Shown here piece by piece: positions 40,781 through 62,481 of a stretch of 64,000 bases of DNA. The notes under the pieces were generated by a model. It was given only the letters and a program-made list of their open reading frames with translations. It searched no databases and had not been told where the DNA came from. The stretch covers positions 23,126,001 through 23,190,000 of the forward strand of contig NC_047016.1 of NCBI RefSeq assembly GCF_902652985.1, in the 5' to 3' direction. Both the position numbers and the translations under genes were made by a program. Every line of letters starts with the position of its first letter. Position 1 is the stretch's first letter. The DNA is from Pecten maximus. Its lineage: Eukaryota.

Positions 40781-42792
40781 ATCAAGAAGCATCTAGCAAT
40801 CCAACAAAAACAAATAGTATCATACATATAATTAGTATTCTTAGTTTTCCATGTAGTATTTGCTAACTGCCAACTGGTTTATATACGTATGTTTAATTGG
40901 TTGGCGGCGAAATTTACAAAAGAATGACTGTTATCTTGATTAAAATCCATCCTTATGAAAATAAAATGTAAAATATGAATCGCACACAATACATTGTAGC
41001 GTTTTAGCATAATCTGTCTTTTTGTCAAATTGAAGCGGTATATTTTACTTTAAATATACTTCATTGCATTGTTCTAAGTAAAAACTAAATTCAATGAATC
41101 ATCCCTTTTCATAATAAACTTATTAATGACATTTTTTATTTACCGGTAATTCAATATTCAGTAGAAGTTAATTTAATGCTTTGTAAATGGGATCAGGGTT
41201 GTGATCAAAATGTAAAATGAGAGTTCGTTAATTATCAATCGATATTAGGTGCAAAGGCAAACGGTAGAAAAAGCAGGCATGATACCATCAATATATCAGG
41301 GAACACTCCGCGGTCACCGACCAGCAGAAAACTATGCACACTTTAAGAACGCAAATAAAGAGTATGACGAGCTACTGTATTAGTCAAGTCATTTAACGCG
41401 TCACTTACGATAGATAGCGTCAGTGAATGTCTTGTTCAATACATATATCGCCATGAATCTTAAAAACGAAATCAAATAAGTAGGTTGTGACTGACGAAGT
41501 GTTCAAGTCTAAAACATATAAATAAATATAGATAAACAGATGTATAACGTAGTAAAACAGATGACGAATGAAAACAATACGACAATTTGATCTCGCGAAC
41601 AAACGGCTGCAACTATTGGAATTTTATAGACGTACTGCAATACCAAATAAAGTGCACTTTGATAAGACGTAGAACTATAAGCATTATACGGCACGACCTT
41701 TCTCAAGGGAAAGCTTCTATCACGCCCATCACACTGAGAATGTAGTGTATAAGTGTTCACAAGTATCGATATATTTTTGAGGATATTGGATATGTGCTTA
41801 TTTCATGAGATAAGAGTAACATCAGTATAAGTTCATCAATTCTTCTCCGTATTGATGCTTAAATACTGTGGCCCTATCAAATATATTCCCTGAAGATTTT
41901 AAACAAATACATGTACATATATGCACTTTTTATGTGTGTGTATCTGATATAAATTGTAACCCCCTATAGTAGTCAGTTGCGTGGCGGTTCAAGGGGAGCA
42001 ACTCTTAATATGATCTGCTAATGAATCGCCCTGGTGTCATCAACGTTCCTAAACTTCCCTAAACGAAAGCACTATTGGATTTAGGAAAATAATTCTTTCC
42101 GTATATTCTGCAAAGTTACCATACGGAAAATTCTAAGTAAATATACGAAATAGGTACCGTATTCTTCAAAGTAGGTAGACTTATCCTACCCTGACGCTTT
42201 CCTAGAATTAAAAGCCGAATGATAAGTATAGAGCTGAACAGGGTGTTCGTCCTTCTAGGACTCGTCAGTGATGATAGGGGCTAAAATTGGAAATTAAGAA
42301 GTAGTATATAGACCACCCACTCAGGTCTAGCCAAAGGTTTGAATATAGAAGGGTTGGGTTACCTTGATATCACGATGTGATGCATGTTTTGATTATGGAT
42401 ACTTTACAAAGTAATTCATTAAGTATATATGCAATAAACAATGGTAACGTGACATGCAGGTAACGATAAACCCCTAATGGCTAATAGTCCATCTGACTGG
42501 TTTATAATCCGGCAACCTCAAAAGTTTCCAGCACATACATTTCATCTATATTTGAAGACATAAATATATATATAAAAAAAAAACAATTCATGACCACTGT
42601 CCATCGATTTGGTTGATTATGTTTACAATCGGACACCACTTAACAGCATCGTCCCCAAAATCCCGACGATGTATTATTCTGAAATGTTCAGAAATTAACC
42701 TGCTATCGTTCTATATCGGAATACGGTCAGCTTGTACAAAGATAAGACGTTATCTACGATTCGTAAAGGTGACGGGAAAGGCGTCTGTGACA

Positions 42793-45700
42793 ATGGCGTG
42801 TATACTACGGCTAGGTGCTGTATTGGCAGCCATAGTATTGCACGGTAAGAAAGTATTTCAACTTGATCCTAATCTTAGTTAGTTTAGTGAGTTTAGGAGG
42901 AGATAACCCACGAGTGCTATATTTCCATCGTTATATGAGAGAAAGAGGCCACTAAAAGAGGGATCCCTAAAGCATCATGGGTTTTTTCTTCTGTATATTC
43001 TTTAGGGATTTTAAAGAGAGACAAATCTCTGCTCAATCGCACCACTTGGGATTTTTTTATCCCATCTACTGTCCTTATCTGTACTTTGCTTTCTTCCGCT
43101 GGTTTCCCCTTGGTACCCGTCCTCATATGGCCCTGACATTTGTTTGCAAAGATGCTTAAAAATTATACAATGTTAACGCAGTGACAATTCGGGGGCAAAA
43201 ACAACATCGACGTGCTAATCAAATCGTAATTCTAACTCGAAATCGATAGAAGGAGGGCAAATGTGAAAATAATATAGCTCACATGGATACCCATGGAAAA
43301 AGTGCAAGGAGACTGATACCATGTGTTCCGATGGATTAAGCGTCTTCAGCTTTGAATACGAAACCCAGGTCAAATCCGCTTTAGGTATATCCTCAAAATT
43401 ATATGGTGGTTAATAACGGAACTAGCAGGCATGCCAACGGGCATCGAACCCGTGACGTCATATTGCAAAATGAAATGACACATTACCCTATGACTCCACA
43501 ATGTCAAACAGGGATGTTCCTAGTTATAAATAAAGATTAAAGATTGGGAAATAGAAACAATCACGATTCTCATACGGTGTAGTTGTTAACTATTTTTTAG
43601 TTATTACGTCGTAGTTAAAGTATGATCGAGGTACGCGACTGATGTCTTCGGTGATTGATTATAAGTTCCTAAGGGTATATTTGGTCGACAGGGTCAACAA
43701 TGGTTTGTTGTTTAAAAGACAATGCACTGAAAATATACCTATAAAGGAAGAATGTTGCAATATCTCTGTTGGCTGTTCTGATAAGCTAAATGTCATCTCT
43801 GCCTCGTATGGAAACAAGACATGGGACACAGTCAGTTTGTCTATTTGTATATAACAATAGTCTGCTGAGATATCGGATCGAAAATCCCATAAGATTTTGT
43901 CGACCTGGTATTCAATCATTGTCACTATTCCATCCGCGATGTATGTCATTTTGACCGTCTCCAAATATGGTACGAATACACTCTCCGATTTACTCTCCGA
44001 TTTATTCTGCTACCATTACTCGCCATCTGTTACAGTTGTACAGTCGCCACATATGCCTGCTCTCACTGCATCTCTCAGGAGGCAAGTTATTGTTGGGACC
44101 CTGCCGAATTGGGGTACACCATGTAAATGAGGAGCCCCAGGATAAGATCTACCATATTCCTTTGATTGTTAATTTATGGTAGAGGGCCATTTAAAGAGAT
44201 ATATTCTTTGCTTAGGAAACATTGAATCTTATCATTTCTTTGCTCTGACCTTTCTTTCGCTGATCTGATAAATTTAGTGTGTCTGTTTTCTACCCGATGT
44301 TCGGAGGAAGTAAGCAGTAAACCCCCTCATTCAAACAAAAAGTTTAACTAGACACTGGAGATTGCTAAAAATAATCCGAATGATGTGGTTTGCGAAATGT
44401 CGTAGTGAAAATCATTGCTATCTGTTTAATTCCTTATGATACTACTAATCAGTTTCTCGAACTCATATCAAAGTAATATCGTACGGTCAATGATGTAATT
44501 GTTGCGATTATGTTGTATTTTCAGTGATTCAAGGATGTCCGAACGGCTGGGAATCATTTGATGATTCCTGTTACTTTGTGTCAGACATGAGAGAAGATTG
44601 GTCAGCCGCATCGGTAAAGTTTGGGCCCCATTGTAATATAAAAGGGGATAAGAAGGAAATCACACACGTGATTTTTGCGCGAAAATTTGCTTTGTCGCAA
44701 AATTGCTAATGCCTTTCGATTCTAATTAACTCAATATCTCCACTTAATTTTTCTTCCCAAAATAACAATAAAAAATAGAATTATCTGCAAATGCTTAGTG
44801 ATTACAGAGGCATTGTATTTAAGCTGATAAATTTAGCATATAGGCAAACAATGTATTTGGGGAAATTATTTTTTTCGCTATTACGCTATCTTGTGTTCCC
44901 CTCCTAGCTCAAACAATGTTCATACTCATCTATTTATTGTTTTCCCTTTTCAGAACACATGCCGCCTGTACCATGCTCATCTTGTCGAGATCGAAAATGA
45001 ACACGAGGATAACTACTTGAAACAAATCATCACCAAATATCACTGTAGGTTGTCTTTCCTGTTTTAATAGATACATCAATTCATATTAAAACACCCTTAA
45101 TATGATATTGCGATATATCATTGATCTGATTTCCCTTCTGTATCTGATCCCCTACTTGTGGGAAAATAAATTTATCGTTGTAAAACAGTAATTGAATGTT
45201 TACCTTCGTTTAGCCAACATGACGTGTTGGATACCACCTCATTAACTATATATATTTGGTTTTAACCAATTTTTGCATGCACTATGCATATCTTAATTAT
45301 TTCCCAAAATAAAGTATTTAAATTTGATTCTTTGACTGCCTGTCCAACCATTTTAACAAACTTTTTTTTATTCTTTTGTCATTTTGACTGGTATATTTGA
45401 CCATTTAATTGGTGCAAATATCTTATACGCCACATTCTATACCGGATCCATAAAAAGGCATTGTCTTTGTATTAATATTTAAAATCTTCAAAATTACTTA
45501 ATGAAGAGATTTGGTCGTTATTCTAAATATTTTGCGAAAATAGAAATGCAAATAGAGGTTAGACAATTAGTGGTTGTTGTATGATATCTCTTTGATTCTC
45601 GTCTCTTATTTTTCAAAAGTTACAAAAACACAAGCTTAAGTAAGTGTTTTTGTAACTTTGAAAAATTTACCAAGGATAGTGAAAGAAAAGCCATATATAA

Positions 45701-48012
45701 CAACCACGAGTTTGTGTGACCTGTTTCTACCACAATAGAAACGCTATTATGAGGATGAATTGACTTGTTTTGTGTCAACGTGTGTTCTTTTCATAATATC
45801 AGATGGAATGTAAGGATATAACCTAGAGTAAAATGCCGCTAATTAATATGCAAAGATGACAATTTCGGATATGAATGGAAATATTACAATTTCTGACAAA
45901 TCATAATAACAAGTAATAATCAAGTTTGTTATAGAAATATTAAGATATTTTGAATATGACAAAAGCCAGAAGACCTTCAAGCGTTAGCCAATCGAAACGC
46001 ATTGAACAACGTGATTAAAAAATAGGCCCGGTCAAAGGTCGCCATATCAACCAATCAAAACGTATTTGAACTTTATTCATAAACTACTCTTATTCAACAG
46101 CTGTAATAATTATTTCAGCCTTGGGAGTTAAATAACAGACACATATTGTGGTAGAAACAGGATTACATAATACAGTATATTGCTTTAGGTCGCTGTTACA
46201 TGTTGTTATTACCAGGAATATTGTAGCTAGATGAATCGCAACCCTAATTTTGAACGTAACACAGGTGGTTTTTCGATGCAATTGAGATGAAGCAGAACTA
46301 TAATGTCATTTATTTTATCTAGATGGACAAGTACATGATAGATACTTTTGGTTGGGTGGAACCGATTCATTTGTTGAGTCAGACTGGAAATGGATTGAAA
46401 GCGACAAACGTTTAACTTATACCAACTGGCTTCCGGGCGAGCCAAATGATCACCATGGCGAGGATTGCCTAGTAGCGGAGCTGAGTGGTTCTCGCTTCTT
46501 TTGGAGAGATCAGGAATGCACTTCGAAATTCAACTTTGTTTGTGAGATCGGGTATGTTCTCATGGCCTCCATTAGGATCTCAGTTTGATATTTTCTTTTT
46601 TTAACTCTGTGATAAAAAGTTAGGGGCGTGTTTGTTACTTGTCGATTTGCCTGGTAGAGTGTGGCTGAAGCCTGATTTGGCCTAAATTGGTATGGCGGAT
46701 GTCGTCGATTTGATATAGATTGGTGTGGGAGGTGTCGTCGACTTGACCTAGATTTGCATGGCAGGTGTCGTCGTCCTGACCTAGATGTGTATGGCGGGCG
46801 ACGTCGATTGGACCTAGATTTGTATTGCAGGTGTCGTCGATTGGACCTAGATTTGTATGGCAGGTGTCGTCGATTTGACCTAGATTTGTATGGCAGGTGT
46901 CGTCGACTTGACCTAGATTTGTATTGCAGGTGTCGTCGATTGGACCTAGATTTGTATTGCAGGTGTCGTCGATTGGACCTAGATTTGTATTGCAGGTGTC
47001 GTCGATAGAAAAAAAAGACACTTACCCTACGGGAACAGCTGGTCTTATTATTAGCATGGTCACTTTTCAAGGGTCTTCATACATATCAAGAAGGTTTTTA
47101 TTTTAGATATTTTGACCTCGTTCAATCGATTTTTAGAATTACGGTTTCTTCTGTCGACATTCAGTATTGTTTTTCTTAGTGTAGAAAGGCGCTGTTAATA
47201 TATGCAATATTTCTTATCGTCTGTCGACCCGTTTTATTTGACTGTACTTACTGTAGTTATCTATTATATTATAACGACAGAACACCGAATAATTAATCGT
47301 GTAAGCCACTCAATTGAGTAGCAATACTTATGAACTAAATTAAAATAATTACAGTACAGATCAATATTTTGATTAGTTAGATAGTTAATTAGTTAATTAA
47401 TGCCATCTAACGGCGTCACAAAGTCTAACACTCGTCAGTGATGTCAGAGTTGAAGATATTGAATAATTTTGAAAAAACACTACCAAAATACGTTTAAATG
47501 TTCTGAACTCCTTCGATCGTTCAAATATTCAAACGTGCCATAAACAGCTTACCATAACCTGAAAGTATCCACAAGCTAAGCGTACCACTCAGTTATCTAA
47601 CGTTTAAACCCATGTACAAGATGTAAGTGGAATATCCAAGTACGTTATTTATGTTTGTGTACGTGGGTATTATAACCTATATAGAAGATAATATGTGACG
47701 CTTTTCTTGATTTTGACGTTACATGTTATAGTACAATATGAATAATTTCGATCTTTCAAATATTTTAAACGTAGATAGCATACCATAAGCTGAAAGTGTC
47801 CGCCAACTTTGCGAGCCACTCAGTTATCTAACGTTTAAATCTATGTTCAAGATGATATCTGACGCCTTTCTTGATGTTGACATTACATGTTATAGTACAA
47901 TATGTATTTTCTTCATGTAAATATTATGTAATAAAATTAAGGTTATGGTTTTAATTATTAGCATTTTATTTTCAGTGGTGATTCTAGTGGAAGTGGAATC
48001 GTTATAGGATGA
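42793..48012 (+). CDS. C-type lectin gene 8 (165 aa, EPN/WRD)
   Basis: Exons 42793-42844 (MACILRLGAVLAAIVLH), 44525-44613, 44954-45044, 46323-46551, 47976-48012 (GDSSGSGIVIG*). 498 nt in frame. Confidence 0.9.
43096..44330 (-). mobile_element. Degenerate Penelope-like retroelement remnant in gene 8 intron 1
   Basis: Minus-strand MIEYQVDKI...QQT.VI...LFPYEAE resembles Penelope-type RT (LEFLIDNIF...QQT.GIPMG...LFLYSYEAE); same remnant in gene 9. Ends approximate. Confidence 0.6.
45560..46170. mobile_element. Non-autonomous DNA element with internal inverted repeats, gene 8 intron 3 (paralogous copy ~53540-54040)
   Basis: CCTGTTTCTACCACAATA (~45720) pairs with TATTGTGGTAGAAACAGG (~46144); hairpin centred on GCTTAAG at ~45635. 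Confidence 0.7.
46680..47005. repeat. 33-bp minisatellite, gene 8 intron 4
   Basis: Unit GACCTAGATTTGTATTGCAGGTGTCGTCGATTG, about ten copies. Confidence 0.95.
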
Positions 48013-48260
48013 AACTTGTCCACATCACTTCAGTAAAATCTCATTTGTTGTATTAATCTGAACAGAATAAATTTCTCACCTGACGACGTTTCAGTGTATG
48101 TTTGTTTTTTGAAATAAATGGTATTAGTATTTGATAACGGGGAGTGATTGATTGTATTTCATTTGTGATGAACTGGTTACTATGTGTGTTTTATATAGAA
48201 ATTTAACCATTAAATTTACTATTAACAAAAATGTATCCATTCCTCAGGCTCTGTTTACTA

Positions 48261-48768
48261 TATACAGTGTAGAGGATATTGAATGGTTTCCCGTTTAATA
48301 TAACATATATTTCACGAGTATGACAGAATATCGATATTTTCACGAGTGCGAAGCACGAGTGAAAAATATCGAAATATTTTGTCATACGAGTCGAATTCTG
48401 TCGTCTTTTTGTGACGTTACTCCACGTCAACTTGACGGCGCCATTTTGAAAAGGACAGCGCAATTTAAGCGTTTTCGGCTGTTATTGGAGAATCTGTGCA
48501 TGGTTAGCTAACGTCAAATGAGTATTTCAGAAATAAAGCAAAATAACCAATTTATCTATCATCGCTTCGATCGGAAAAATCGGCAAGTTTCAACGAAGTA
48601 AATTCAAAGGTCCGCTCTGATTGGTCAAAAACGGAAAACTTATATTTTCACTGCAAAACTTATATTTTCACAGTAAAATCTTGTATTTTCACTGCTCATC
48701 GCTGCAGTGAAAATATAAGTTTTATAAGTTTGATAATTTCTATATTTCACCGGCAAAAATGCAATAAA
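48261..48768. mobile_element. ~500-bp hairpin-bearing insertion downstream of gene 8
   Basis: Absent from paralogous site ~57150; palindromes TTTCACGAGTGCGAAGCACGAGTGAAA (imperfect) and TTTTCACTGC...GCAGTGAAAA. Family uncertain. Confidence 0.7.
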
Positions 48769-49450
48769 AAAAGTATAAATATAACATTACAAACAATCCA
48801 AACGACTTTAAAATCTTGAAGAATGGATCAGTCCATTAACAATGAACAGCTGTTTAAAAATTGTATATTGTAGAAACAGAACGATACTATTTGAATACAG
48901 GCAAATGAGAACTATCCACAAATTTTTTTTAGGTTATACCCTCTTTTGAGATCCTCATTCACTCCAGGAAACCTGCGCGCGCCAGATAGGCAAAATGACC
49001 AGAGGCAGGAAAGATGTTTTTTTTTTTTTTTTTTTTTTAAATAGTATCTTAAGTCAAACGCAGTTATTCAAAACAGGAAATAAGCATATCCTTGAAAATT
49101 TCAAAACGACCTCATCTTAACTGAATGACAAAGGGCCATGTTGTCCCCTTGACATGTATAAAGACATTGAATTAAACGCATATGATCTACAATACTTCCA
49201 TGAAAAGTCAAGCTTGAAGTCATGACGGAAATAATAATAATACATAAACAGTAAATACAGGGGAAAAGTAGGTGAAGTTAGAAATATGGAGCTGTAACGC
49301 ATTCACTGTGTATAAGGAGTAATCTGATAATTGTTATCGCCCAAAAGCAGTACTTGTTTTATGATAGATAACTTTTTGTATGCACTATAGCGAGATAAGA
49401 CGCTATCTCCTGGATTATGCCCCAGTAAATTCCCTCGATAATATACTATC

Positions 49451-52400
49451 ATGTATATTGTACGGATAGGACTGGTGTGCGTGATTCTGGTTACGCAAGG
49501 TATGAACAACATTTAAACATTTCATAAAAAATTGTAATTCCGCAAAAGAAAAGTCAATATTACTGACCCTCATAACGTTAAATTTCGAACATATTTGTAT
49601 TGAAAGGTTCTAATCGTATTTATCCTGCAACGGGCATTTGCATTGTGGGAATAAATCCCACTACATATATTTTTGCTGTATTCTGCATTAACGGAAACCA
49701 GCTATATTTTAGAATCTTAGCACGTACCTCAATTCGACTGACATATTTGGAGCATTGCTGATATCGTTTCACTAAAAAATACTTATTTGGTTGACTGTTA
49801 CCTGATAAAAAGAATACATGGTCAGTCTCTTAAAATATAAGCTGTATTTTTGCTCGGGACAGAAAGACAAAAGTGTCTCTTCAAAGGCTCGCCACTTTGC
49901 TTTTCTTTATCCTCGTCAAAATACAGTATTCTCTACATATCTTTTACCTTCCGTATACGGTATCAGATGTTTGCGTTGATCTCCAGTGATCTTCGGACTT
50001 CCAAACGGCTGTGAAACATTTGACGGCTCCAGCTATTTTGTATTCAGCATCACGGAAGATGGGCTAGCCGCAACGGTAACTGGACTTTGGATGTACAATC
50101 ATACATAACATGTAATGCTCATTCTGTATACATAATTATATAGATGGTTAAAGTTTCTTTAGGCAGTTGTAAAACATGACTGATTTGTAAAATGGTTCAT
50201 ACTTAATTGTCGTCATTTTCTTTTTCGAGTTACCTTGGTTTCTTCTTCATTACTTTAGCCATATTCACTTCTGGTGATGGCTGCTCTTGAATAGTATTAT
50301 TGTAACTGATTTTTTCCCCGTTGGTTTTCCCTTGGTACACGTCTTCATGACTCGACTCTTACAATTCTATGCAAAACTTTTAAACAGCATACACTGTTCA
50401 CGCAGTGATACTACTGGAACAAAAGCCATAACTGTAATTCTAACTCGAAATCAATTAAACAAGGGCAAAATGTTAATACAATATAACACTCATGGAAAAT
50501 GGAAGGAGGCCATGTGCTCCGGTGGAGTAAGCGTCTTCAGCTTTAAATACGACACATACTCTGCATATCTAGGTCAGATCCGCTATAGGTACTATCCTCA
50601 AAATAAGATAAATGGTGGTTAAAAGGAAACCTGTAGGCTGACCAAAGGGCATCAAACAAATCTGACGTCATATTACACAATGAAATGGCACATTTAACCT
50701 ATGAGTTCACGACGTCAACGTTACAATATTACCATCGTATAAATCTGAAAACACCATATTTTTCTGTCCGGAAATTTTGATAATGTTAACAACTCTTGGG
50801 ATACAAAATCATCTGGGATAGGTAAACACAGGTTGGGGATACAGGGTTTTAACTATATATGAAAAGAAAATCAACAATGGGCCAACTGAAATAATCACGC
50901 TCCTCATATAAAGGATGTTAAGAAAGTCCGTCCCTCAAATTAGAAAATGGTGTAAACATGATAAAGGCATTCGTATAATTCTTCCTGTGTTAATAACCTG
51001 AAGCACCACCTTCGTTTCTGTTTATATCTTTTATTATATTAAGCATTGTGTGAATTAAGGTAGACACGTGTTCCTAAGGTATACCCCTCTACGCAAAGAT
51101 TAATCGACGTCGAAATGGGTCCATTAACGTTGGACATGGGTCTCTATACACCTTTGTATCAAGAAAACTCCTTAGAATTTTAACTGGATTTAAATCAGGA
51201 GAATTCCAGGTCAATTTTCTTTAGAAATAAAGGTTGACAAATTACTTGTTCGTCATTTCTGTGTAGCACGAGCCATATAGGGCGTGCCACCATACTGGTG
51301 GAAATTTTCCCGCCTGGGGTAGGGTACCAATTTCTTTTCGTCCATGGAACCGCTTGCATTTTGATATTGTCGTCTTCTACTTCAGTGAATACACGTCTCC
51401 ATAGCAATCGAAAAGAGTCATACTCAAGGGAGGTAATATCGTATATAGGATACACACTACAAATTTAACTGCGACTAAAATTTGAAGGCGATACGTGATT
51501 TTACTCCCGAATTATAAGCAAATTCATTCACGGAACATACTTTCTTATCACCATTTAGCTTATTTGTTAGCTGGTTTTTAGTTGAATATGATCGAGGTAA
51601 GCTTCTGATAATGAAGAGTAATCCATGTCTTTGATTTTAGGTTCGTTAGGGTATATCTGATCGACAAAGTCAATAATTGTTTGTTGTTTTAAAGACAAGG
51701 CATTGTCAATACATCTCTAGATGAAGAATTTTGCGATATCTTTGTTGGCTGTTATGATAAGCTCAATGTCATCTCTGCCTCGTATGGAAACAAGACATGG
51801 GACACAGTCCGTTTGTCTATTTGTATATAACAATAGTCTGCTGAGATATCGGGTCGAAAATCCCACAAGATTTTGTCGACCTGGTATTCAATCATTCTCA
51901 CGATTCCATCCTCGGTGTATGTCATCTTTGCCCCCGGGATAAGATCTGCCGTATCCCATTGATTGTTAATTAATAGTAGGTAAGAGATATGTTTTCTGTA
52001 TAGAAGATAGTGAATCTTATCGCTTCTTTGTTCTGCCCTTTCTTTCGGAGATTTGTTTTATTTTGTGTGTCTGTTTGCAACCCGATGTTCGGAGGACGTG
52101 AGCCCCCTGATACAAACAGAGAAAAGTTTAACACTACAGATTGTTAGAAACAATCCTTATAATAATGTTATTTTTGATATGTCACAATAAAACCGTTATC
52201 TGTTTAATTTCTGCTAGTTATTTCCCGAATTCATATTTAAAATGTCATATACGGTCAATGATGTAATTGTTGCGATTATGTTGTATTTTCAGTGATTCAA
52301 GGATGTCCGAACGGCTGGGAATCATTTGATGAATCCTGTTACTTTGTGTCCGACATGAGAGAAGATTGGTCAGCCGCATCGGTAAGGTTCAGGCCCCATT

Positions 52401-55400
52401 GTGATATTTAAGAGGATACGACAAGGTCAGGAAATGAACGTATATAATCGATCTTTGCACCACCATTTGCTTTGTTGAGAAACGTATGTGCCTACCACAC
52501 TTTATATCTAGACTCTTGGAGAAAACACGCAATTACAAAAAAAAACAAATATTTGAGGATATTAAATGTAATAACTATCCCAAACAATGGTCGAACAAAG
52601 AGTAAAGTAATGTAACACATACTTATTTATAAAAGTGTTTTCCCTTTTCAGAATACATGCCGCCTTTACCATGCTCATCTCGCCGAGGTCGAAAATGAAC
52701 ACGAGGATAACTACCTGAAACAAATAATCATTAAATATCACTGTAGGTTGCTTTTCTGTTTTAATACATATATATATTAACATTAAAACACCCTAAGTAT
52801 AAGATTGCGATATATCATTTAACTAACTTCTATGGCAAGCCAAGTTGTCATTTGTTCACGTAGCAACGTTGATCCAGAATCTTACCAAATTATATAAGAT
52901 TTCTTATATAATATAGAAGATATCTCATATACTTTATAAGATATATTTTAAAATAAATTATATATCTTATATAATGTATAGGATATATTATATATTATAT
53001 AGATATATTATATAGAAAATCATATAAGATACATAAGCTATATTATATTTGATATAAGATATCTTATGATTTGGTAAAATACTGGATCAACATTGCTCCA
53101 CGATTTAATGACAACTTGGCTTTCATAAATTCTCCTTCTGCATCTGACCCCCTTTCCAAGGAAAATAAATTTGGCACCTGGTGTACATCAGTGATAGAAT
53201 GTTGACACTAGTTTTTTACATGACGTGCTGTGTAACACCTCATTAACTACATGTATATATTTGGTTTTAATTATTTTTAATATATATATATATAGATATA
53301 TATAATAGATATATGCCGTAATTGATTTTCGCAAATTATGTATTTAAATTTAATCTTATGGCTGCCTTTCACACCATTTTAATCAAACTTTGTTTTTATT
53401 ATTCTGTCATTTTGATCTTTTACATTCTATACCGGGTTCTAGAAAGTGCGTGGTCTATTGTATCAATGTTGAAATTCTTCTTCTTCGTCATTATAAGCAA
53501 GGATTAAAAACTCATTTTCCATGAGAAAATGGAAATGCAAATAGAGGTTACACAACGAGTGGTTGTTGTATATGGTATTTCATTAATTCTCGTTAATTTT
53601 CTTTTTATATATATCATAAATAACCTGTAGGATGTTTGGATATGACCTTTAGTAAAATGCCGCTAATTAATATGCAAAATTGATAATTTCGGAAATGTAT
53701 TGAAATATTACAATTTATTACAATACGTAACAAATATTAAGCAAGTTTATTAAAGAAATCTATATATTCTTTTTAAATATGACACAAACAAGAAGTTCTT
53801 GTGTATTATCTTTCCCGGGACGCCGTGAAGCGGCCTTCAAGCGTTAGCCAATCAAAACGCATTGAACCACGTGATTAGAAAAATAATCCCGGTTAAAGTT
53901 CACCATGTCAACCAATCAAAACGCATTTAGAGTTTATTCCACGTTTGGCATAAACTGAATATTATTCAACATTTGTTATGATTATTTCATGCCTTGAAAG
54001 TTAAATAACACCCACCTATTGTGGTAGAAATATGATAAAATAATATGGTATATTGCTCTAATTCGCTCTAAATGTTGTTGTTTTTTTCTGACAAGGTTGA
54101 ATGTCCCAGCTGGATGAATCGCTCACTTAATGCTGAACGTAGCACAAGTGGTTTGTCTTTACAATTGAGAGACTGAAGAACTACACTGTTATTTATCTTT
54201 TCTAGATGGACAAGCAGACGATAGATACTTCTGGCTGGGTGGAACCGATTCGTTTGTTGAGTCAGACTGGAAATGGATTGAAAGCGGCCTGCGCTTTACT
54301 TATACCAACTGGCTTCCGGGTGAGCCAAACGATAACGATGGCGAGGATTGCCTAGTAGCGAAATTGAGCGGTTCTCACTTCCATTGGAGAGATCAGGAAT
54401 GCACTTCGAAATACAACTTTGTTTGTGAGATCGGGTAAGTCAGACGTATTCGATGCGTGTCGATATGCCTAGTGGTTCCTTTGTCATCACCCTAGTCTTC
54501 ATTTTGAGAGTGTGACTTAACCTGAATATTAACTAGATTTGTATGGTAGGTGTCGTCAATTTGACGATCTAGATGTGTATGGCGGGCGACGTCGATTTAA
54601 CGATCTAGAATTGTATGGCTGGTGTTGTCGATTTTACCTAGATTTGTATGGCGGGTGGCGTCAATTTGGCCTAGATTTGTATGGCGGGTTGCGTCGATTT
54701 GACCTGGATTTGTATGGCGGGTGGCGTCAATTTGCGGGCCTAGGTTTGTATTGCAGTTGTCGGCGATGAAACAAAAGACACCTACCCTACTGGAACATCT
54801 TGTCTATACACAAATCTAGATTCTGATTTTGAGTTGGAATGACGGTTCCGTTATTATGTCGATATTCTGTGTCGTTTTTTTTGTTTAAGTTTGTTTACCA
54901 TATACATTTGCTGTGTTTTGGTGGGTCGCGGTGGCCGAGTGGTTAAGGTGTCCCGACACTTTATTACTAGCCCTCTACCTCTAGGTTGCAGTTGCCAGGT
55001 ACTGACCGTAGGCCGGTGGGTTTTCTCCGGATACTCCGGCTTTCCTCCGTCTCTTAAACCTGGCACGTCCTTAAATGATCCTAGCTGTTAATAGGACGTT
55101 AAACAAAAACAAACCAAAACTGTGTTTTTGCATGTTTTATCGTCTACTGGGATACTGTAGTTGTTGTAGTTATATTGAGTATTATCTTTAACCGAGAGAA
55201 CACCAAATAATTATGCAACCCACTCAAGTGAATAGCAATACGTATGAATTTAAATACTTACAGCACATGTCAATATATTAATGAATCAGTTAGTTAGTTA
55301 ATGCCATATAGCGGCGTCATAACGTCTAGCACTATTCAGTGATGTCAGAGCCGAAAAGAATGTAAATACAGAAGAGACGTTTGGACAATTGAAATCGGTT

Positions 55401-56882
55401 TATGTCAAGTGTACAGACCTAACGATTCAATCAATTGGGAACATTATAGATATTGATTAATTTTCAAATGACATCAAAATACGTTTACATATCCTGAACT
55501 CCTACGATCGTTCAAACATCTAACGTTTAAATCCATGTTCGTGTAATATTCAAGTACGTCGTTTATGGAACATCTTGTCTATACACAAATCTAGATTCTG
55601 ATTTTGAGTTGGAATGACGGTTCCGTTATTATGTCGATATTCTGTGTCGTTTTTTTTGTTTAAGTTCGTTTACCATATACATTTGCTGTGTTTTGGTGGG
55701 TCGCGGTGGCCGAGTGGTTAAGGTGTCCCGACACTTTATTACTAGCCCTCTACCTCTAGGTTGCAGTTGCCAGGTACTGACCGTAGGCCGGTGGGTTTTC
55801 TCCGGATACTCCGGCTTTCCTCCGTCTCTTAAACCTGGCACGTCCTTAAATGATCCTAGCTGTTAATAGGACGTTAAACAAAAACAAACCAAAACTGTGT
55901 TTTTGCATGTTTTATCGTCTACTGGGATACTGTAGTTGTTGTAGTTATATTGAGTATTATCTTTAACCGAGAGAACACCAAATAATTATGCAACCCACTC
56001 AAGTGAATAGCAGTACGTATGAATTTAAATACTTACAGCACATGTCAATATATTAATGAATCAGTTAGTTAGTTAATGCCATATAGCGGCGTCATAACGT
56101 CTAGCACTCTTCAGTGATGTCAGAGCCGAAAAGAATGTAAATACAGAAGAGACGTTTGGACAATTGAAATCGGTTTATGTCAAGTGTACAGACCTAACGA
56201 TTCAATCAATTGGGAACATTATAGATATTGATTAATTTTCAAATGACATCAAAATACGTTTACATATCCTGAACTCCTACGATCGTTCAAACATCTAACG
56301 TTTAAATCCATGTTCGTGTAATATTCAAGTACGTCGTTTATGTTTTTGTACGTGGGTGATATAGCCTATATAGAAGATAATATGTGACGCCTTTCTTGAT
56401 GTCGACATTACACGTTATAGTACAATATGTATTTTCTATATTTCAATACTATATAATTAATTTTTCTTTGTTTTCATGGTAAATACTCAAATCTGATTGG
56501 TCGAAAAATTCTTTTCATTCTTCTATGAAAGAAATTCCGAGAATGGCGCGAAAATGTGACGTCACAATACGACAATTGACGTTGCGTATTGATTTGAGAA
56601 AACCAGTAAAATTGTACATAAAACATGTTTTAAATTAGAAAATCATTTTCAAAAATTAATTATATAGTTTCATCGGGGTATGAAACAAATTTTGTTTGCA
56701 AACTACTGTAAGAATCCGCTACGCGGATTCACACAGTTTGCAAACAAAATTTGTTTCAAACCCCGATGAAACTAAATAAAAAAAAAAAAAATGCTTAAAT
56801 GATAAAACAGAATTACTTTGAAAATTATCAGCATTTTATTTTCAGTGGTGAATCGAGTGTAAATGGAAACGTTTTCGGGTGA
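49451..56882 (+). CDS. C-type lectin gene 9 (chimeric, 164 aa, EPN/WRD)
   Basis: Exon 1 49451-49499 (MYIVRIGLVCVILVTQ, same peptide as gene 10), then gene-8-like exons 52293-52381, 52652-52742, 54206-54434, 56846-56882 (GESSVNGNVFG*). 495 nt in frame. No other exon 1 seen upstream of 52293, so the exon 1 to exon 2b join is inferred. Confidence 0.78.
49987..50075 (+). pseudogene. Degenerate extra exon 2 (2a) inside gene 9
   Basis: 89 nt, AG/GT intact, open frame VIFGLPNGCETFDGSSYFVFSITEDGLAAT. Paralogous to gene 10 exon 2 but both conserved Cys and both Trp are substituted. Confidence 0.8.
50317..52110 (-). mobile_element. Penelope-like remnant in gene 9, interrupted by a Tc1/mariner fragment
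   Basis: Minus strand RCIDNALSLKQQTIIDFVDQIYPNEPKIK...AYLD resembles RYIDDVLSLNN...IYP.ELEIK...SYLD; colinear with 43096-44330. Confidence 0.65.
50910..51340 (-). mobile_element. Tc1/mariner transposase remnant
   Basis: Minus strand FHQYGGTPYMARATQK*...FISKEN*PG/PDLNPV resembles FQQDGAP.H.A..TQ.W...WP.NSPDLNPIE; absent from gene 8 intron 1. Confidence 0.7.
52831..53127. mobile_element. Fold-back MITE with AT-rich core, gene 9 intron 3
   Basis: Long imperfect TIRs AAGCCAAGTTGTCATT...GTTGATCCAG..TTACCAAAT and ATTTGGTAA..CTGGATCAAC...AATGACAACTTGGCTT; absent at paralogous site ~45130. Confidence 0.8.
54533..54768. repeat. 33/36-bp minisatellite, gene 9 intron 4
   Basis: CTAGATTTGTATGGCGGGTGGCGTCAATTTG variants, paralogous to the gene 8 array. 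Confidence 0.9.
54920..55119 (+). mobile_element. tRNA-derived SINE (V-domain-like), copy 1
   Basis: A-box GGTGGCCGAGTGGTTAAGG; core GGGTTTTCTCCGGATACTCCGGCTTTCCTCC; tail GACGTTAAACAAAAACAAACC; target-site duplication CTGTGTTTT at 54911 and 55120. Confidence 0.85.
55695..55894 (+). mobile_element. tRNA-derived SINE, copy 2 (made by the 775-bp duplication)
   Basis: Same sequence and flanks as copy 1, offset 775 bp. Confidence 0.85.
56455..56800. mobile_element. Hairpin-bearing non-autonomous element near the end of gene 9 intron 4
   Basis: ~105-bp inverted repeat 56666-56773 centred on GAATCCGCTACGCGGATTC; absent from gene 8 (~47910-47945). Confidence 0.7.
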
Positions 56883-59800
56883 AACTTGTACACGCCTCTT
56901 CAGTAACATCTCATTTGTTGTATGAATCTGAACAGAATAAACTCCTTACTTGACGAAGTTTCAGTTTCATGTTTGTTTTTATTCTTTGTAGAAACAAATA
57001 AAACTAGACTGGTAGCGAATATATTTTCTTTTGTTCAAATACTTGATTTTATTTCATTTATGATGAACTGGTTACAATGTGTGTTTCGTATAGAAATCTA
57101 ATAATTGAATTTACTAATCACAAACATTGATCCATTCCTCGGGCTCTGTTTACTACAAAAGTATAAACATAACATTACAAACAATCCAAACGAATGTAAA
57201 ATATTGAAAGAATGGATCAATCCGTTTTATAATCAACAAATCTTATTTAAATGCATATTGTAGAATCAGAATGATATAATTGGAGCGAGAACTAACAACA
57301 AGAATACTATAGTTTACACCCCTCTTTAGAGATCCTCTTTAACTTGAGGAAACATGCGGCAGAAAGGCATACTCAATACTGATCACAATATTTTTATTTA
57401 GACATTTTACATTTCTTTCATTTCATCTAAAAGATTAAATTATATTCGCGGGAAATGACATTTGATGACGTAACCGGAAACCCGCATGCTATTAGATCGT
57501 GACCCGGATATAATGTTCACCTGTTTTACGAGAGAAACATGACGATTCTAAAAACAGATGATTATCGAACATAACCGGATTATTTTTGCATTTGTTGAGA
57601 CACCAATGTGCTAGAATTTCTATTAAGAATATTTGTTCTCATCATGTACAGTACATCTTTATTTTAAAATTGACTGGTCTGATCTGGAATTTGATTTTAC
57701 ATGACCACAAGGCCACGTTACTGTCATTTAAGGATTGAATGAAGTTATGTTGAGGTGTATGGGGGTATAAACCTCAATAGGTCTTGAGACAAATTTATTA
57801 TGAACTGCTTCGCAGTTATGTATTTATAGTTTATTGATTTTTCTTTTTTCTTTTGTTTGTATAATATTTTGTCCTTCACAAATAGGGACTTGTGCAAGTC
57901 TACCACGATACTTACCGAAATGTACGTCATCACTCTTCGTCTACATATGGTTATTACTTTCAGGATTTCTTTCGTGAACAAATTTAATAACGAATTAAAA
58001 CAAATATTATTTTTAATGGAATTTATTTCATATAAATATTAAAAAATATAGTCCCCTATTTTTAGAATGACAAATGTATTCCTACGCCGGACTTGATATA
58101 GTTCATTGAAAAATGACTTGAGTTAACTGTGGTAGGTTCATTGAGTCTGAGTTAAGTGGAAATATGAAAATATACTTTTGTAAACACTTGGTATGTCTGT
58201 TTACCCTATAACTCGATCTCATAACCTGTCTTTTTACTCTATGACTCATAACCTGTCTCATGATACTTCAATACTTTTGGTCTGATTTCAATACACAAAA
58301 TGTCAGATTTTATTAATCAATAGATCTTGCAACATCATCTTCTAACAGGGGCAAAGACCTTTGATGAGACTAAGTAATGAGTAGCCAGAGTTTCTTCTTG
58401 CCACCACACCGGAAATTAGACACTGACAAGCTCTCATACAGTTGCTAACTTTGGTTTGGGAACACATTCTCAAATAACAGATGATCACATGCTAAGTTCA
58501 GGATTGGATTTTTCCAAAATTGAAGGGTTGTGCCCCTTTGTTTTGTCCCTATGCATCATATTCTAGCAGTTGGCTATTCATATTTGTATTCATTTGTTCT
58601 ACACCTCATTATAATACATCTGGTGATATTTGAAATTGTTTGACATATGGAATAGGTAATTATATTGAGTCACATTGACTTCAGTTCTTCAATTCATCCA
58701 GTTCAAGATTTCTGGAAGTTACAAAAGAGGTGAAACTTTTCAAATTCATTTTAGTTTCCATATAGGTAAGATTTTAATATTTTATTGTTAAGGTTGTTTA
58801 CTTTATATTGTTGGAGGCGGAGGATTTATTCATATAAATCGAATATAACTTTTATATAACAAGGTTTCCACTTGCCTGTTTGTATGCTTATAATTAATGT
58901 CCTTTCTTTTGATAATATCTCTGTGAGTTATAGTCCCTCTCATGAGTGTTTACTTTTCTTTCTGTTAAATATCTTAAACTGTTTCTTTTCATTTATTTAA
59001 GTTTCCAGTTTCCTTTTGGTAAAAAATTCTCATTTTTTTTTTTTTTTTTTTTGAGAATTGGCTGGTTTTCAAAATTTGCTTTTTGTTTTGCAATGCATCA
59101 ATATTTTGCATGTCTCAATAACATATATATAGACATGCTCTGTTCATGCTCGAGTTTCCTTAAAACTGTTGTTGGACATTTTGAATTGGCGGATGTGTCT
59201 GATTAGCACATAATTAACTCAAAATTGTATACGATTTCATCAATAATTATTTCTCTTTGCTTTCATTTTAAAATTATCTGACTCAAACAGTTTTCTCCTT
59301 GTGGTTTAAATCTAATTGTGACATTTAAAATTCATTAAAGACCACTGGAGCCAGACATGCAAAAACCTTGAAAATCTTTAACTCAATAACCTTTAGGCCA
59401 ATATACCTGGTATTGGGCCTGTAGTATCCTGGTGAAGTGATACAAAATTTGTTTAAAAAACGAACGACAGTGACGTCCAGTCAAGGTCACAGCAGTCAAA
59501 CATGCTTAAATATTTAAAACTTTTTTTCTCAATATCAATATGAGGTCAAGAGAAGCACATGATTCATATATATATAGGCCCATATGGTCTCTCTTTGGTT
59601 GCTGCATAATACCTCTAAAAGTCTTTCAGGCTCGCATGTCAAAGGTCAATGTCACTATTTCTATCAAATGAAAATCAGTTGCTTGGAATACTACATGTAG
59701 CTTCAGATTTGAAAGTCAAATGTTAAAGATAATGTTACTATAGATAGAAAAAATCTTGCACATATCAATGAAAATCCATGCTTTCCCTAGATGAGAAAGT

Positions 59801-60142
59801 ATAAGATACTAGCTCACAGATTCTCTTTTTTTTATAAATATTCTTCACGTGGATAGATACGACAGCATTTTACATACTTTAATATATAAATACTTATTAC
59901 TGGTTAGCTTGTTATAATAATAATAATAATAATAATACATAAACAGTAAAGACAGAGGAAAGGTGTGAGAGAAGTAAGGAATATGGAGCTGTAATGTATT
60001 CACTGTGTATAAGAAATAATAAGATATTTGCATACTGCCCGAGAGCAGTTCTTGTTTTATGAAAGATAATGTTTTGTATTATAGCGAGATAAGACTATCT
60101 CCTGGATTGTGTTCCAGTAAATTTCCTCGTTAGTTTACAATC

Positions 60143-62481
60143 ATGTATATTGTACGGATAGGACTGGTGTGTGTGATCCTGGTTACGCAAGGTATGAACC
60201 ACATTTACTACTGTTAAAGATAAAGATATGTTATACTGCGAAAAAAAGTTCATATTACAAACCTTAAATTGCATTTAATGGTGTTGATCATATGTAACTT
60301 TCACCTTCCGAATACGATACCAGATGTCTATATGACACACAGCATGTATGTTTGTCTCCAGTGATCAGCGGATGTCCGAACGGCTGGGAAACATTTGACG
60401 GGTCCTGCTATTTTATAATCGGAATCACAGAAGATTGGCTAGCCGCGTCGGTAAATAAACTTTGGATTTACAATCATACATAACATTACCTACATATCTG
60501 TAATGTACATGATACTATAGTTGCGCTTATGTAACTTTAGACAGTTTTGAAACACGACTGATTTGTGTATTGGTTAATGATTAGTTGTCGCCGTTTTATT
60601 ATTCGAGTTCCCTATGTTTCCTTTTCATTACTTTAGGCCATTTTCACTTCTGGTAATGAGTGGTCTTGTCTGATATCATTGTAATTTATTCGGTTAAACT
60701 CGAAGTATTTGTTTGTCTATCGGTTTATATCATTGTAATTATTGTGTCACTGCTGTGGGATATATAAATGGTGAGTTCTGTACTGAATTCCTCCACGTAA
60801 TACTTGAACAGCTTGAAAATTTCTCACCACAACAGTTACGTAAGTGTTTCCTTTTACAGGACACATGTGGTCTGTTCCACGCCCATCTCGCTGTGGTTGA
60901 AGATGAACTCGAGAATAACTTTTTGAAACAAATTATCAACAAATATCATTGTAAGTTTTATTTTCATGTGAGTATCTAACTGTGAATAAATAACCATATT
61001 GTTTTATAATTTTACGCACTTAAATCCAGTTAATTCCGATATTCAACATTTTGTTTGATAACGAAAGAAATGCTTTATCTAAAAGTACATAATATCAAAT
61101 GTATCTTCCAACACTCGTTTTAGATTTTTTTTAAAGAATATTTGGTACATAAGAGACGTATATTTCATCAAATGTGTGGCTTTAACTACGCTTTGCACAT
61201 TAAATGGTCATCTGAATAGCAGAATAATGTTGAATTTCAAATACAAATAAATATTTTTTAAAAGAAATGCACAAAATAGCTATGCTATATACCAAAATAT
61301 TTGTTTAGATATGTAGTTTCTTAAAATCACCAATAATTTGCTGTAGATGCTAACAGTTTCTTCTGTAGAGCTACTTTGTGGTGAGATGTAGCATGGAATA
61401 ATAATAAGTCACACAAATAACCAAACCTGAAAAATAGCCATGCTGTTATGCTCACAAGTGTCTATATAGGAGCATTGGTTTGACCTTCTGCTATATATGC
61501 GATACAAATGAACTAATCAAGTCCCCCCTGAAACATGCTTTGTTCGCATGTTTTGTTGAAATTAACAAACAGCAAGTCCCATGGTTTTCCCTGATACATA
61601 CTAAAAGTTGATCAAGTTATTTCCGTTAAATTGCACCATAGTAGGAATTTATAGGCATTGTGACTGGATTGGCTATTTAGATGACCCTTAAACTATTTTT
61701 TTTTCAAATTAGAGAAATAATTGCCATTCACTTTCATTGAATGAACAAATAAACATACTATTTTCAATCAGTTTTTTTTATTGGAACGGAGTTTGAGATT
61801 CAGTTAAAGAATCTGAATCTGTTTCCTGAAAACTCTTGTTCAATTGTTCATTTGTAACAGTCTTATTAATTATCCTTCATCCATGAAATACTAAATGCTT
61901 GATGATAAAAACGCATTTTATGTATTTTCATGAATTACTAATTTTGAATACGTATGATACCAGTAGTTTTACACAAGAATGAAATATACAGATATAGAAC
62001 AGTTATAAGGTATCCTGGCCTCTAGATGGGCAGATAAACGACCGCTTCTACTGGCTGGGCGCTACTGACGTGTTTGTGGAGGGAGACTGGCGATGGCAGA
62101 GCAGTGGACATCGACTAAATTATACCAATTGGGGACCAGCAGATCCTAACAATCTGCATGACCAGGATTGTATGCTAGCGGAATTCACCAATACTCACTT
62201 CTTCTGGATCGATAGAGGATGTTCTGAAAAACATAGCTTTGTTTGTGAAATCAAGTAAGTCCGTTTTAAAGGAAAGATCTATTAAAGCGTATATACGTAT
62301 GTGTTAACATAAAATACGTCATATGATATTAGCTGTCATGAAAAATTATATTGATGACCGTCTACATTTTGACAGGGAATAATACATCACGTGGTTTCTA
62401 TCAGTAAAAGTGACTTACATATACTTTTATTATGTTTATTTTATTTCAAGCGATGGTTCTGATGCAGTCATTATTGGATGA
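60143..62481 (+). CDS. C-type lectin gene 10 (162 aa, DPN/WID)
   Basis: Exons 60143-60191, 60362-60450, 60860-60950, 62026-62254, 62451-62481 (DGSDAVIIG*). 489 nt in frame. Confidence 0.9.
61204..61687. mobile_element. TTAA-flanked MITE (Kolobok-like) in gene 10 intron 3
   Basis: TTAA-ATGGTCATCTGAATAGC at the left and GCTATTTAGATGACCC-TTAA at the right; similar ends at ~17810-17830 and its copies. Confidence 0.65.

What the first reader, a model, noticed from the sequence alone, without database searches (positions are those of the whole stretch)
49230..56882. Fusion gene with two frame-incompatible exon-2 copies
Seen: 49230-50305 matches the promoter, exon 1, exon 2 and start of intron 2 of gene 10. 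At ~50305-50317 the sequence switches to homology with gene 8 intron 1 (~43096) and continues through gene-8-like exons 2-5. Exons 2a (49987-50075) and 2b (52293-52381) are both 89 nt and phase 1 to 0, so using both shifts the frame while either alone is in frame. Inference: a gene 8-gene 10 pair duplicated, then a deletion fused the inner two genes. That puts a gene-8 lectin domain under a gene-10 promoter and creates a potential mutually exclusive exon pair.
Basis: partly seen in the sequence, partly recalled or inferred. Interest (0 to 1): 0.8.

Follow-up and report, generated by a model that had tools for sequence, protein, structure and literature searches.

The report
Expressed chimeric lectin gene, relic exon
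In a scallop lectin gene cluster, an old tandem duplication joined the promoter and signal-peptide exon of one C-type lectin gene to the sugar-binding domain of its neighbour; the resulting gene is transcribed and conserved, and the extra "exon 2" it inherited is a decaying leftover, absent from the assembled transcripts, not an alternative exon.

Summary
Window 49230-50311 is homologous to gene 10 (promoter, exon 1, exon 2, start of intron 2). From 50318 on it is homologous to gene 8, from intron 1 through exons 2-5. There are two 89-nt exon-2 copies in phase 1→0. Using both puts a TGA at the first codon read in exon 2b.

Spliced RNA contigs from four runs of three studies join exon 1 (49499) directly to exon 2b (52293), then to exons 3, 4 and 5. 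None covers exon 2a. The 164-aa product is a signal peptide plus a C-type lectin domain with EPN and WRD motifs. It is under purifying selection against gene 8 (dN/dS 0.24 at dS 0.28).

Exon 2a evolves at the intron rate: 82% identity against 78-80% for flanking introns. It has lost 5 of the 14 residues that are invariant in the nine other exon-2 copies, including two Cys and two Trp.

So the fusion gene and the promoter swap are real. The mutually exclusive exon reading is not supported.

One tandem duplication explains the structure without a later deletion. Its breakpoints lie in gene 8 intron 1 and gene 10 intron 2. This is a known kind of event, and a clean example in Pecten maximus.

The parts
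49230..49450 (+). Promoter-proximal region and 5' UTR of gene 9, of gene-10 type. A TATA-like TGTATAAGGAG lies at about 49311.
   Evidence: 85% identical to 59925-60142 upstream of gene 10. The TATA-like motif is conserved at 60008. RNA contigs start at 49443.
49451..49499 (+). Exon 1 coding part: ATG plus signal peptide MYIVRIGLVCVILVTQ. It ends in phase 1 at donor GTATGA.
   Evidence: 47 of 49 nt are identical to gene 10 exon 1, both differences are synonymous, and the peptides are identical. Contigs with 0 mismatches over 49443-49497 join it to 52291/52293.
49616..49941 (.). Dispersed repeat of about 325 bp inserted in the intron between exon 1 and exon 2a. It is absent from gene 10 intron 1.
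   Evidence: At least 40 copies on many chromosomes at 72-77% identity, with an inverted internal segment. It appears as an alignment gap against gene 10.
49987..50075 (+). Exon 2a: a relic copy of gene-10 exon 2 (89 nt). AG and GT are kept, but it is absent from the assembled transcripts (contigs of 4 runs).
   Evidence: Zero contig depth in 49988-50184 in 4 runs, and no joint to or from it. 82% identity to gene 10 exon 2, the intron rate. 11 of 15 polarisable changes lie on its own lineage. C4L, W8C, C15S, W25G and S29T fall at positions invariant in 9 other copies.
50311..50318 (.). Duplication junction: gene-10 intron 2 sequence changes to gene-8 intron 1 sequence.
   Evidence: Pairwise alignments and BLAST block ends. 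No dispersed repeat was found at the junction.
50718..51579 (.). Repeat-derived insertion of about 860 bp in gene 9 intron 1. It has no counterpart in gene 8 intron 1.
   Evidence: Gap in the homology with gene 8. Dispersed copies lie on several chromosomes at 75-85%.
52293..52381 (+). Exon 2b: the exon 2 that is used, of gene-8 type. It encodes (V)IQGCPNGWESFDESCYFVSDMREDWSAAS.
   Evidence: Joints 49499>52293 and 52381>52652 in all 4 runs. 87 of 89 nt are identical to gene 8 exon 2.
52652..52742 (+). Exon 3 (91 nt).
   Evidence: RNA joints. 90.1% identity to gene 8 exon 3. Weak Lectin_C match at profile positions 10-35.
54206..54434 (+). Exon 4 (229 nt): the core of the C-type lectin domain, with FWLGGTD, EPN and WRD.
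   Evidence: RNA joint 52742>54206. Pfam PF00059 Lectin_C at 44.9 bits against a cut-off of 22.6, E 2e-11. 89.5% identity to gene 8 exon 4.
54533..54767 (.). Minisatellite of 32-33-bp units in intron 4. It is shared with gene 8 and with the upstream lectin units.
   Evidence: Self-BLAST ladders. Sequence read. It is skipped in the RNA: exon 4 is followed by letters found only at 56846.
54791..56342 (.). Two tandem copies of a 777-bp unit in intron 4 (3 differences). Each carries a SINE-like repeat of about 195 bp (54923-55118 in the first copy).
   Evidence: 99.6% identity. About 2,900 candidate genomic copies at 84-91%. Very high RNA contig depth at 54913-55100.
56846..56882 (+). Exon 5 coding part, (G)GESSVNGNVFG plus stop. 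AATAAA lies at 56936.
   Evidence: A contig in run X2 runs on from 54434 into 30 letters that occur only at 56846-56875. The acceptor is TTTTCAG. The stop ends at 56882. AATAAA located.
42793..48012 (+). Gene 8, the parent of the 3' part. Exons: 42793-42844, 44525-44613, 44954-45044, 46323-46551, 47976-48012.
   Evidence: Intact 165-aa reading frame with canonical splice sites. It is the closest genome-wide relative of the gene 9 3' part.
60143..62254 (+). Gene 10, the parent of the 5' part. Exons 1-4: 60143-60191, 60362-60450, 60860-60950, 62026-62254. Exon 5 was not located.
   Evidence: In-frame model with AG/GT sites and DPN...WID motifs. It is the only genome-wide relative of the gene 9 5' part.

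Best explanation
Gene 9 is a functional, transcribed chimeric C-type lectin gene of the king scallop. An old tandem duplication ran from gene 8 intron 1 to gene 10 intron 2. At its junction, a copy of the gene 10 promoter, exon 1 (signal peptide) and exon 2 came to lie in front of a copy of gene 8 exons 2-5. The spliceosome joins exon 1 directly to the gene-8-type exon 2b. This gives a 164-aa secreted lectin with the gene-10 signal peptide and a gene-8-type EPN carbohydrate-recognition domain.

The gene-10-type exon 2a sits inside what is now a 2.8-kb intron 1. It is a relic that is absent from the assembled transcripts and has drifted neutrally.

Shown here: the homology pattern, the splice junctions, the intact reading frame and the selection pattern. 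Inferred: the single-step origin, secretion and sugar binding, and that expression follows gene-10-type regulation.
For: 1. Mosaic homology. The 5' part matches only gene 10 in the 918-Mb genome. The 3' part matches gene 8 best.
2. Duplication signature. Colinear homology of 43096-50311 with 50318-60690 includes an intergenic block, 48769-48977 ~ 57157-57358. That is the signature of one tandem duplication across gene boundaries.
3. Transcription. Joints 49499>52293, 52381>52652 and 52742>54206, all GT..AG, occur in contigs of 4 runs from 3 studies. Exon 1 letters in those contigs are gene-9-specific. Exon 5 was found at 56846. The genome holds no intronless copy, so the joined form is RNA.
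4. Product. The reading frame is intact at 164 aa, and Pfam Lectin_C is met.
5. Selection. Gene 8 against gene 9 over exons 2b-5 gives dS 0.283, dN 0.067 and omega 0.24. Exon 1 has only 2 synonymous differences from gene 10.
6. Exon 2a. No RNA depth. 82% identity against 78-80% for flanking introns, and pairwise omega 0.69. 11 changes on its own lineage against 4 on gene 10's. 5 of 14 invariant residues are lost, including both Cys of the N-terminal disulfide and two Trp, while a new unpaired Cys is gained.
7. Precedent. [quoted passage not shown]
Against: - All RNA evidence is assembled contigs, which drop rare isoforms. Transcripts containing both exon 2 copies would carry a premature stop and could be removed by nonsense-mediated decay before they are seen.
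- Tissue and condition of the runs are unknown (ids are coded).
- Exon 2a still has canonical AG and GTAA splice sites, so why it is skipped is not explained.
- The lineage asymmetry on exon 2a is only marginally significant on its own (11 of 15, one-sided P = 0.059).
- Expression of genes 8 and 10 could not be compared, so the claim that gene 9 follows gene-10-type regulation is untested.
- Secretion and sugar binding are inferred from sequence only.
Confidence: 0.85

Rival explanations
1. Exons 2a and 2b are a working mutually exclusive pair. Frame incompatibility enforces the choice of one, and two lectin isoforms differ in their N-terminal segment.
For: The two exons have the same length (89 nt) and phase, and both keep AG/GT sites. 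Double inclusion gives an immediate TGA. Contigs cannot exclude a minor or condition-specific isoform.
Against: Exon 2a has no contig depth and no joint in 4 runs from 3 studies. The exon 1-2b-3-4 contig is unbranched in all four. Exon 2a diverges at the intron rate. It has lost C, W, C, W and S at positions invariant in 9 paralogous copies. An exon 1-2a-3 product would lack the alpha-1 Trp of the domain core and would carry an odd number of cysteines.
Confidence: 0.06
2. Exon 2a acts as a poison exon. Occasional inclusion together with exon 2b gives a premature stop and nonsense-mediated decay, which tunes the output of gene 9.
For: Splice sites are intact. Double inclusion gives an immediate TGA. 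Such transcripts would be under-represented in steady-state RNA, so their absence from contigs is weak evidence.
Against: There is no positive evidence. Exon 2a and its flanks show no conservation above the neutral level, which argues against a selected regulatory role. No joint 49499>49987 or 50075>52293 was seen in any run.
Confidence: 0.05
3. Gene 9 is two dead gene halves or an assembly artefact, and is not a working gene.
For: Chimeric duplicates are usually lost (stated in PMC5460883). The locus is full of repeat insertions and has a 99.6%-identical intronic duplication that could be an assembly problem.
Against: Spliced contigs cross the junction in 3 independent studies, with gene-9-specific letters. 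The reading frame is intact. Omega is 0.24 at dS 0.28. The copies differ by about 20-25%, so they are not a collapsed or mis-joined recent duplicate. The junction is single-copy in the genome.
Confidence: 0.03

Closest known systems
Chimeric genes formed by tandem duplications that cross gene boundaries (exon shuffling by partial duplication, e.g. the Drosophila yakuba chimeras of PMC5460883)
   Same: The 5' end (promoter and first exons) of the downstream parent is united with the 3' end of the upstream parent at the duplication junction. Both parents stay intact on either side. The chimera is transcribed as one mRNA.
   Different: This one is old (dS about 0.28) and has been kept under purifying selection, whereas most described cases are young and segregating. 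Both breakpoints fall in introns at non-equivalent positions (intron 2 and intron 1). The chimera therefore inherited two copies of the homologous exon 2, one of which had to be skipped.
Mutually exclusive exons that arose from tandem exon duplication and are kept apart by frame incompatibility and nonsense-mediated decay (general knowledge, not tested against a paper here)
   Same: Two adjacent homologous exons of equal length and phase. Inclusion of both shifts the frame and gives a premature stop.
   Different: Only one of the two is seen in RNA. The other evolves neutrally and has lost core residues. The pair arose by fusion of two paralogous genes, not by duplication of an exon within one gene.
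Expanded tandem arrays of secreted C-type lectins in bivalves (single-CRD, perlucin-like immune lectins; family assignment from general knowledge)
   Same: A signal peptide plus one long-form C-type lectin domain of about 145 aa, built from five exons in a tandem cluster whose members differ in their sugar-binding motifs (gene 9 and gene 8 have EPN/WRD, gene 10 has DPN/WID).
   Different: The WND motif is WRD here. No binding or immune data exist for this gene.

Membership tests
C-type lectin-like domain protein (Pfam PF00059) | Match to the Lectin_C profile above the curated cut-off | tested here: met
   Exon 4 alone scores 44.9 bits against a cut-off of 22.6, E 2.2e-11, profile positions 38-106 of 107. 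Exon 3 matches positions 10-35 weakly.
C-type lectin-like domain protein (Pfam PF00059) | Long-form cysteine pattern (C0-C0', C1-C4, C2-C3) and a WIGL-like core motif | tested here: met
   Read from the spliced model: CPNGW...SCYF in exon 2b, NTC in exon 3, FWLGGTD, EDC, QEC and FVC in exon 4. With exon 2a in place of 2b, C0 and C0' and two Trp are missing.
C-type lectin-like domain protein (Pfam PF00059) | Canonical Ca2+ and sugar-binding motifs EPN or QPD, plus WND | tested here: inconclusive
   EPN is present. WND is replaced by WRD in both gene 8 and gene 9. Binding was not tested.
Chimeric gene from a boundary-crossing tandem duplication | The 5' part derives from one parent and the 3' part from another, with a sharp switch | tested here: met
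   for the window. Searches show that the parents are the best or only matches genome-wide.
Chimeric gene from a boundary-crossing tandem duplication | Intact parents flank the chimera in the predicted order, and the two duplicated segments are colinear, intergenic DNA included | tested here: met
   Gene 8 lies upstream and gene 10 downstream, both with open models. 43096-50311 is colinear with 50318-60690.
Chimeric gene from a boundary-crossing tandem duplication | A single transcript spans the junction | tested here: met
   Joint 49499>52293 in contigs of 4 runs from 3 studies.
Mutually exclusive exon pair | Two homologous neighbouring exons of the same length and phase that cannot be used together | tested here: met
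   89 nt each, phase 1 to 0. Using both gives an immediate TGA.
Mutually exclusive exon pair | Each exon is found in mature transcripts, in alternative isoforms | tested here: not met
   Only exon 2b appears in the contigs of 4 runs, and exon 2a has zero depth. Contigs can miss rare isoforms.
Mutually exclusive exon pair | Both exons are under purifying selection | tested here: not met
   Exon 2a is 82% identical to its parent, against 78-80% for the introns. It has lost 5 of 14 invariant residues.

The most novel reading that the evidence does not exclude
Exon 2a is not fully dead. In some tissue or after immune challenge it is spliced in. One possibility is use in place of exon 2b, giving a lectin with a remodelled N-terminus that lacks the disulfide. 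The other is use together with 2b as a poison exon that switches the gene off through nonsense-mediated decay. Either would be a regulated alternative-splicing module born from a fusion of two paralogous genes, not from exon duplication.
Probability: 0.08. Interest if true: 0.55.

Novelty: new member of a known kind. Interest (0 to 1): 0.35.

Why it matters
This is a clean case, resolved to within a few bases at the junction and backed by RNA, of how tandem lectin clusters in bivalves produce new genes.

One duplication that ignored gene boundaries re-coupled a promoter and signal peptide with a different carbohydrate-recognition domain (EPN/WRD in place of DPN/WID). The product has been kept by selection for a long time.

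It also shows what happens to the surplus homologous exon that such a fusion inherits. It was silenced and is decaying. It was not recruited as an alternative exon.

For annotation, the practical point is that gene models including exon 2a (49987-50075) would be wrong.

The event type is well known, so the general significance is modest.

Tried and rejected
1. I first guessed that exon 5 began at the last minisatellite unit (acceptor at about 54757). The RNA rejected this. The contig runs from 54434 into letters found only at 56846.

2. I looked for a separate first exon in 50318-52292.
- Gene 8's exon 1 and promoter (42000-43095) have no counterpart there.
- One chance ATG mini-ORF (51721-51781) has no RNA depth.

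3. I looked for a repeat at the breakpoint that could have mediated homologous unequal crossing-over. No dispersed repeat was found at 50311-50318. About 20% later divergence makes microhomology unreadable.

4. I tried to explain the skipping of exon 2a.
- The splice sites are canonical.
- A 325-bp repeat lies upstream, ending about 45 nt before the acceptor.
- The last roughly 40 nt of the intron differ from gene 10 by a net indel of about 18 nt. This cannot be polarised.
- No cause is established.

5. Rfam and tRNA scans of 49000-57300 gave nothing above threshold.

- The joined (spliced) protein model was not sent to any search, cluster look-up or fold tool.
- Exon-exon junction sequences were not searched.
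- Exons were searched one by one by reference.
- As a result I could not look up the public annotation of this gene or fold the 2a and 2b versions.

7. The large protein searches were not used, because Pfam settled the family.


Full report
**Setting.** The window is a tandem array of small five-exon C-type lectin genes on the + strand, in AT-rich animal DNA. The window's genome has 918,306,378 bases in 3,983 contigs. That is exactly the size and scaffold number published for the king scallop Pecten maximus assembly (PMC7191990). I therefore take the organism to be P. maximus. The window is C2:23126001-23190000.

**Observation.**
- 49230-49563 matches 59925-60258 (81.8%).
- 49980-50311 matches 60355-60690 (78.8%). 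Both lie in gene 10.
- 50318-50718 matches 43096-43507 (69.8%) in gene 8. Colinear blocks then run through all remaining gene-8 exons to 57155 ~ 48260.

Pairwise alignment puts the switch between 50311 and 50318.
- In gene 8 the breakpoint lies in intron 1 (exon 1 is 42793-42844, exon 2 is 44525-44613).
- In gene 10 it lies in intron 2 (exon 2 is 60362-60450, exon 3 is 60860-60950).

Exons 2a (49987-50075) and 2b (52293-52381) are both 89 nt, AG/GT-flanked and in phase 1 to 0. Either alone is in frame. Both together give a TGA at the first codon read in 2b.

**Are the neighbours really the parents?** In the whole genome the 5' part finds only itself and gene 10. The exception is a dispersed repeat of about 325 bp at 49616-49941, inserted in the intron. 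The exon 2b-3 stretch and the exon 4 stretch find gene 8 as by far the best relative (78-86%). They find no second copy and no intronless copy.

**Transcription.** One read-laying run on 49200-55100 used four runs from three studies. Two are on record as RNA, two are guessed to be RNA, and all are Logan contigs. In every run it gave one contig with three joints: 49499>52293, 52381>52652 and 52742>54206. All three have GT..AG ends.
- The exon 1 letters (49443-49497) fit gene 9 with 0 mismatches. Gene 10 differs there at two coding bases plus UTR bases. The contig is therefore not a gene 10 / gene 8 assembly hybrid.
- The genome has no retrocopy, so the joined form is spliced RNA.
- Bin 49988-50184, which holds exon 2a, has zero depth in all four runs. 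No joint touches 49987 or 50075.
- In run X2 the contig continues past 54434 into 30 letters that occur once in the window, at 56846-56875 behind a TTTTCAG acceptor. That fixes exon 5, with its stop ending at 56882.

- Exon 1 is joined to exon 2b.
- No separate first exon is needed or seen in 50318-52292.
- The junction is supported indirectly by transcripts that carry both parental parts.

**Product.** The coding sequence is 49451-49499, 52293-52381, 52652-52742, 54206-54434 and 56846-56882. It encodes 164 aa: a hydrophobic N-terminal signal-like peptide identical to that of gene 10, then a long-form C-type lectin domain of gene-8 type.
- Pfam Lectin_C is met by exon 4 alone (44.9 bits against a cut-off of 22.6).
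- The sugar-site motifs are EPN and WRD, as in gene 8. Gene 10 has DPN and WID.
- Exons were searched by reference.

**Selection.**
- Gene 8 against gene 9 over exons 2b-5 gives dS 0.283, dN 0.067 and omega 0.24. The dS value matches the non-coding divergence of about 20-25%. Both copies have therefore been under purifying selection since an old duplication.
- Exon 1 differs from gene 10 by two synonymous changes only.
- Exon 2a behaves like intron. It is 82% identical to gene 10 exon 2, against 78% and 80% for the flanking introns and 85% for the promoter.
- Of its 15 polarisable differences, 11 fall on the 2a lineage and 4 on gene 10's (one-sided P = 0.059).
- Of 14 amino-acid positions invariant in the nine other exon-2 copies of this window, exon 2a has changed five: C>L, W>C, C>S, W>G and S>T. 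These remove both cysteines of the N-terminal disulfide and two core tryptophans, and add an unpaired cysteine.

Exon 2a is a decaying relic, not the second member of a working exon pair.

**Origin.** The segment 43096-50311 is colinear with the segment 50318-60690.
- The first holds gene 8 exons 2-5, intergenic DNA, then a gene-10-type promoter, exon 1 and exon 2.
- The second holds the same elements.
- The colinearity includes an intergenic block, 48769-48977 ~ 57157-57358.
- Gene 8's exon 1 and promoter have no second copy. Gene 10's exons 3-4 match gene 9 only at the paralogue level, 65-78%.

This is what a single tandem duplication with ends in gene 8 intron 1 and gene 10 intron 2 produces: gene 8, the chimera, gene 10. 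The sequence cannot tell them apart. No repeat was found at the junction, so the join was probably non-homologous. [quoted passage not shown]

Later events in gene 9:
- repeat insertions at 49616-49941 and 50718-51579;
- a SINE-like insertion at 54923-55118;
- a very recent 777-bp tandem duplication in intron 4.

**What remains open.**
- Contigs cannot exclude rare, tissue-specific or decay-sensitive isoforms that use exon 2a, which still has canonical splice sites.
- Why exon 2a is skipped is not established.
- Expression of genes 8 and 10 could not be compared.
- Secretion and binding are inferred.

**Verdict.** The fusion gene and the promoter swap are real and expressed. The mutually exclusive exon idea is not supported. 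This is a well-documented new example of a known kind of event, in a bivalve immune-lectin cluster.

Noticed in passing
window 52253-52372 vs 44485-44604: The last 40 nt of intron 1 and the first 40 nt of exon 2b are 100% identical between gene 9 and gene 8. About 118 of 120 nt match over the patch, in a background of about 75%. Exons 3 and 4 are only about 90% identical. The cause could be a short gene-conversion tract, or unusually strong constraint on the acceptor and branch region of the exon that must out-compete exon 2a.
   Followed up: partly
window 54791-55567 and 55566-56342: A 777-bp unit occurs twice in tandem in intron 4 of gene 9, with only 3 differences. Gene 8 has one copy of the homologous stretch. 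It is either a very recent duplication or an assembly artefact. It does not touch coding sequence.
   Followed up: partly
window 54923-55118 (and 55698-55893): A SINE-like dispersed repeat of about 195 bp with about 2,900 candidate copies in the genome at 84-91% identity. RNA contig depth on it is 10^3 to 4x10^4. ARAGORN finds no tRNA and Rfam gives no match.
   Followed up: partly
window 46676-47005, 54533-54767; also 13.9-14.9 kb, 19.8-21.0 kb, 26.0-27.2 kb, 32.1-33.2 kb, 38.9-40.6 kb: G-skewed minisatellites of 32-33-bp units (CCTAGATTTGTATGGCAGGTGTCGTCGATTTGA-like) sit in the intron after the main lectin exon of most genes in the array, 0.25 to 1.7 kb long. Each unit carries a TTGTATKGCAG acceptor-like motif. 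The sequence just before the array (54437-54520) is a dispersed repeat, so the array may be part of a mobile element.
   Followed up: partly
window 51579-51933 vs 43612-43956: An intron 1 block is conserved at 84.8% between gene 9 and gene 8, above the intron background of about 75%. Open frames of 54-73 codons are kept in both copies. It has no RNA depth in the four runs. It could be a regulatory element or an old repeat.
   Followed up: no
window 52332-52333, 54252, 54287: Transcript contigs of runs X1 and X8 carry variants relative to the assembly. 52332 A>G plus 52333 A>T turns Glu into Gly in FDESCYF, which is the state of gene 10. These are probably allelic polymorphisms of gene 9 among individuals.
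   Followed up: no
window 56660-56779 (- strand): A sub-threshold Rfam match to mir-5014 (72 bits against a gathering score of 101) lies in intron 4 just upstream of exon 5. It is probably an AT-rich hairpin of a repeat.
   Followed up: no
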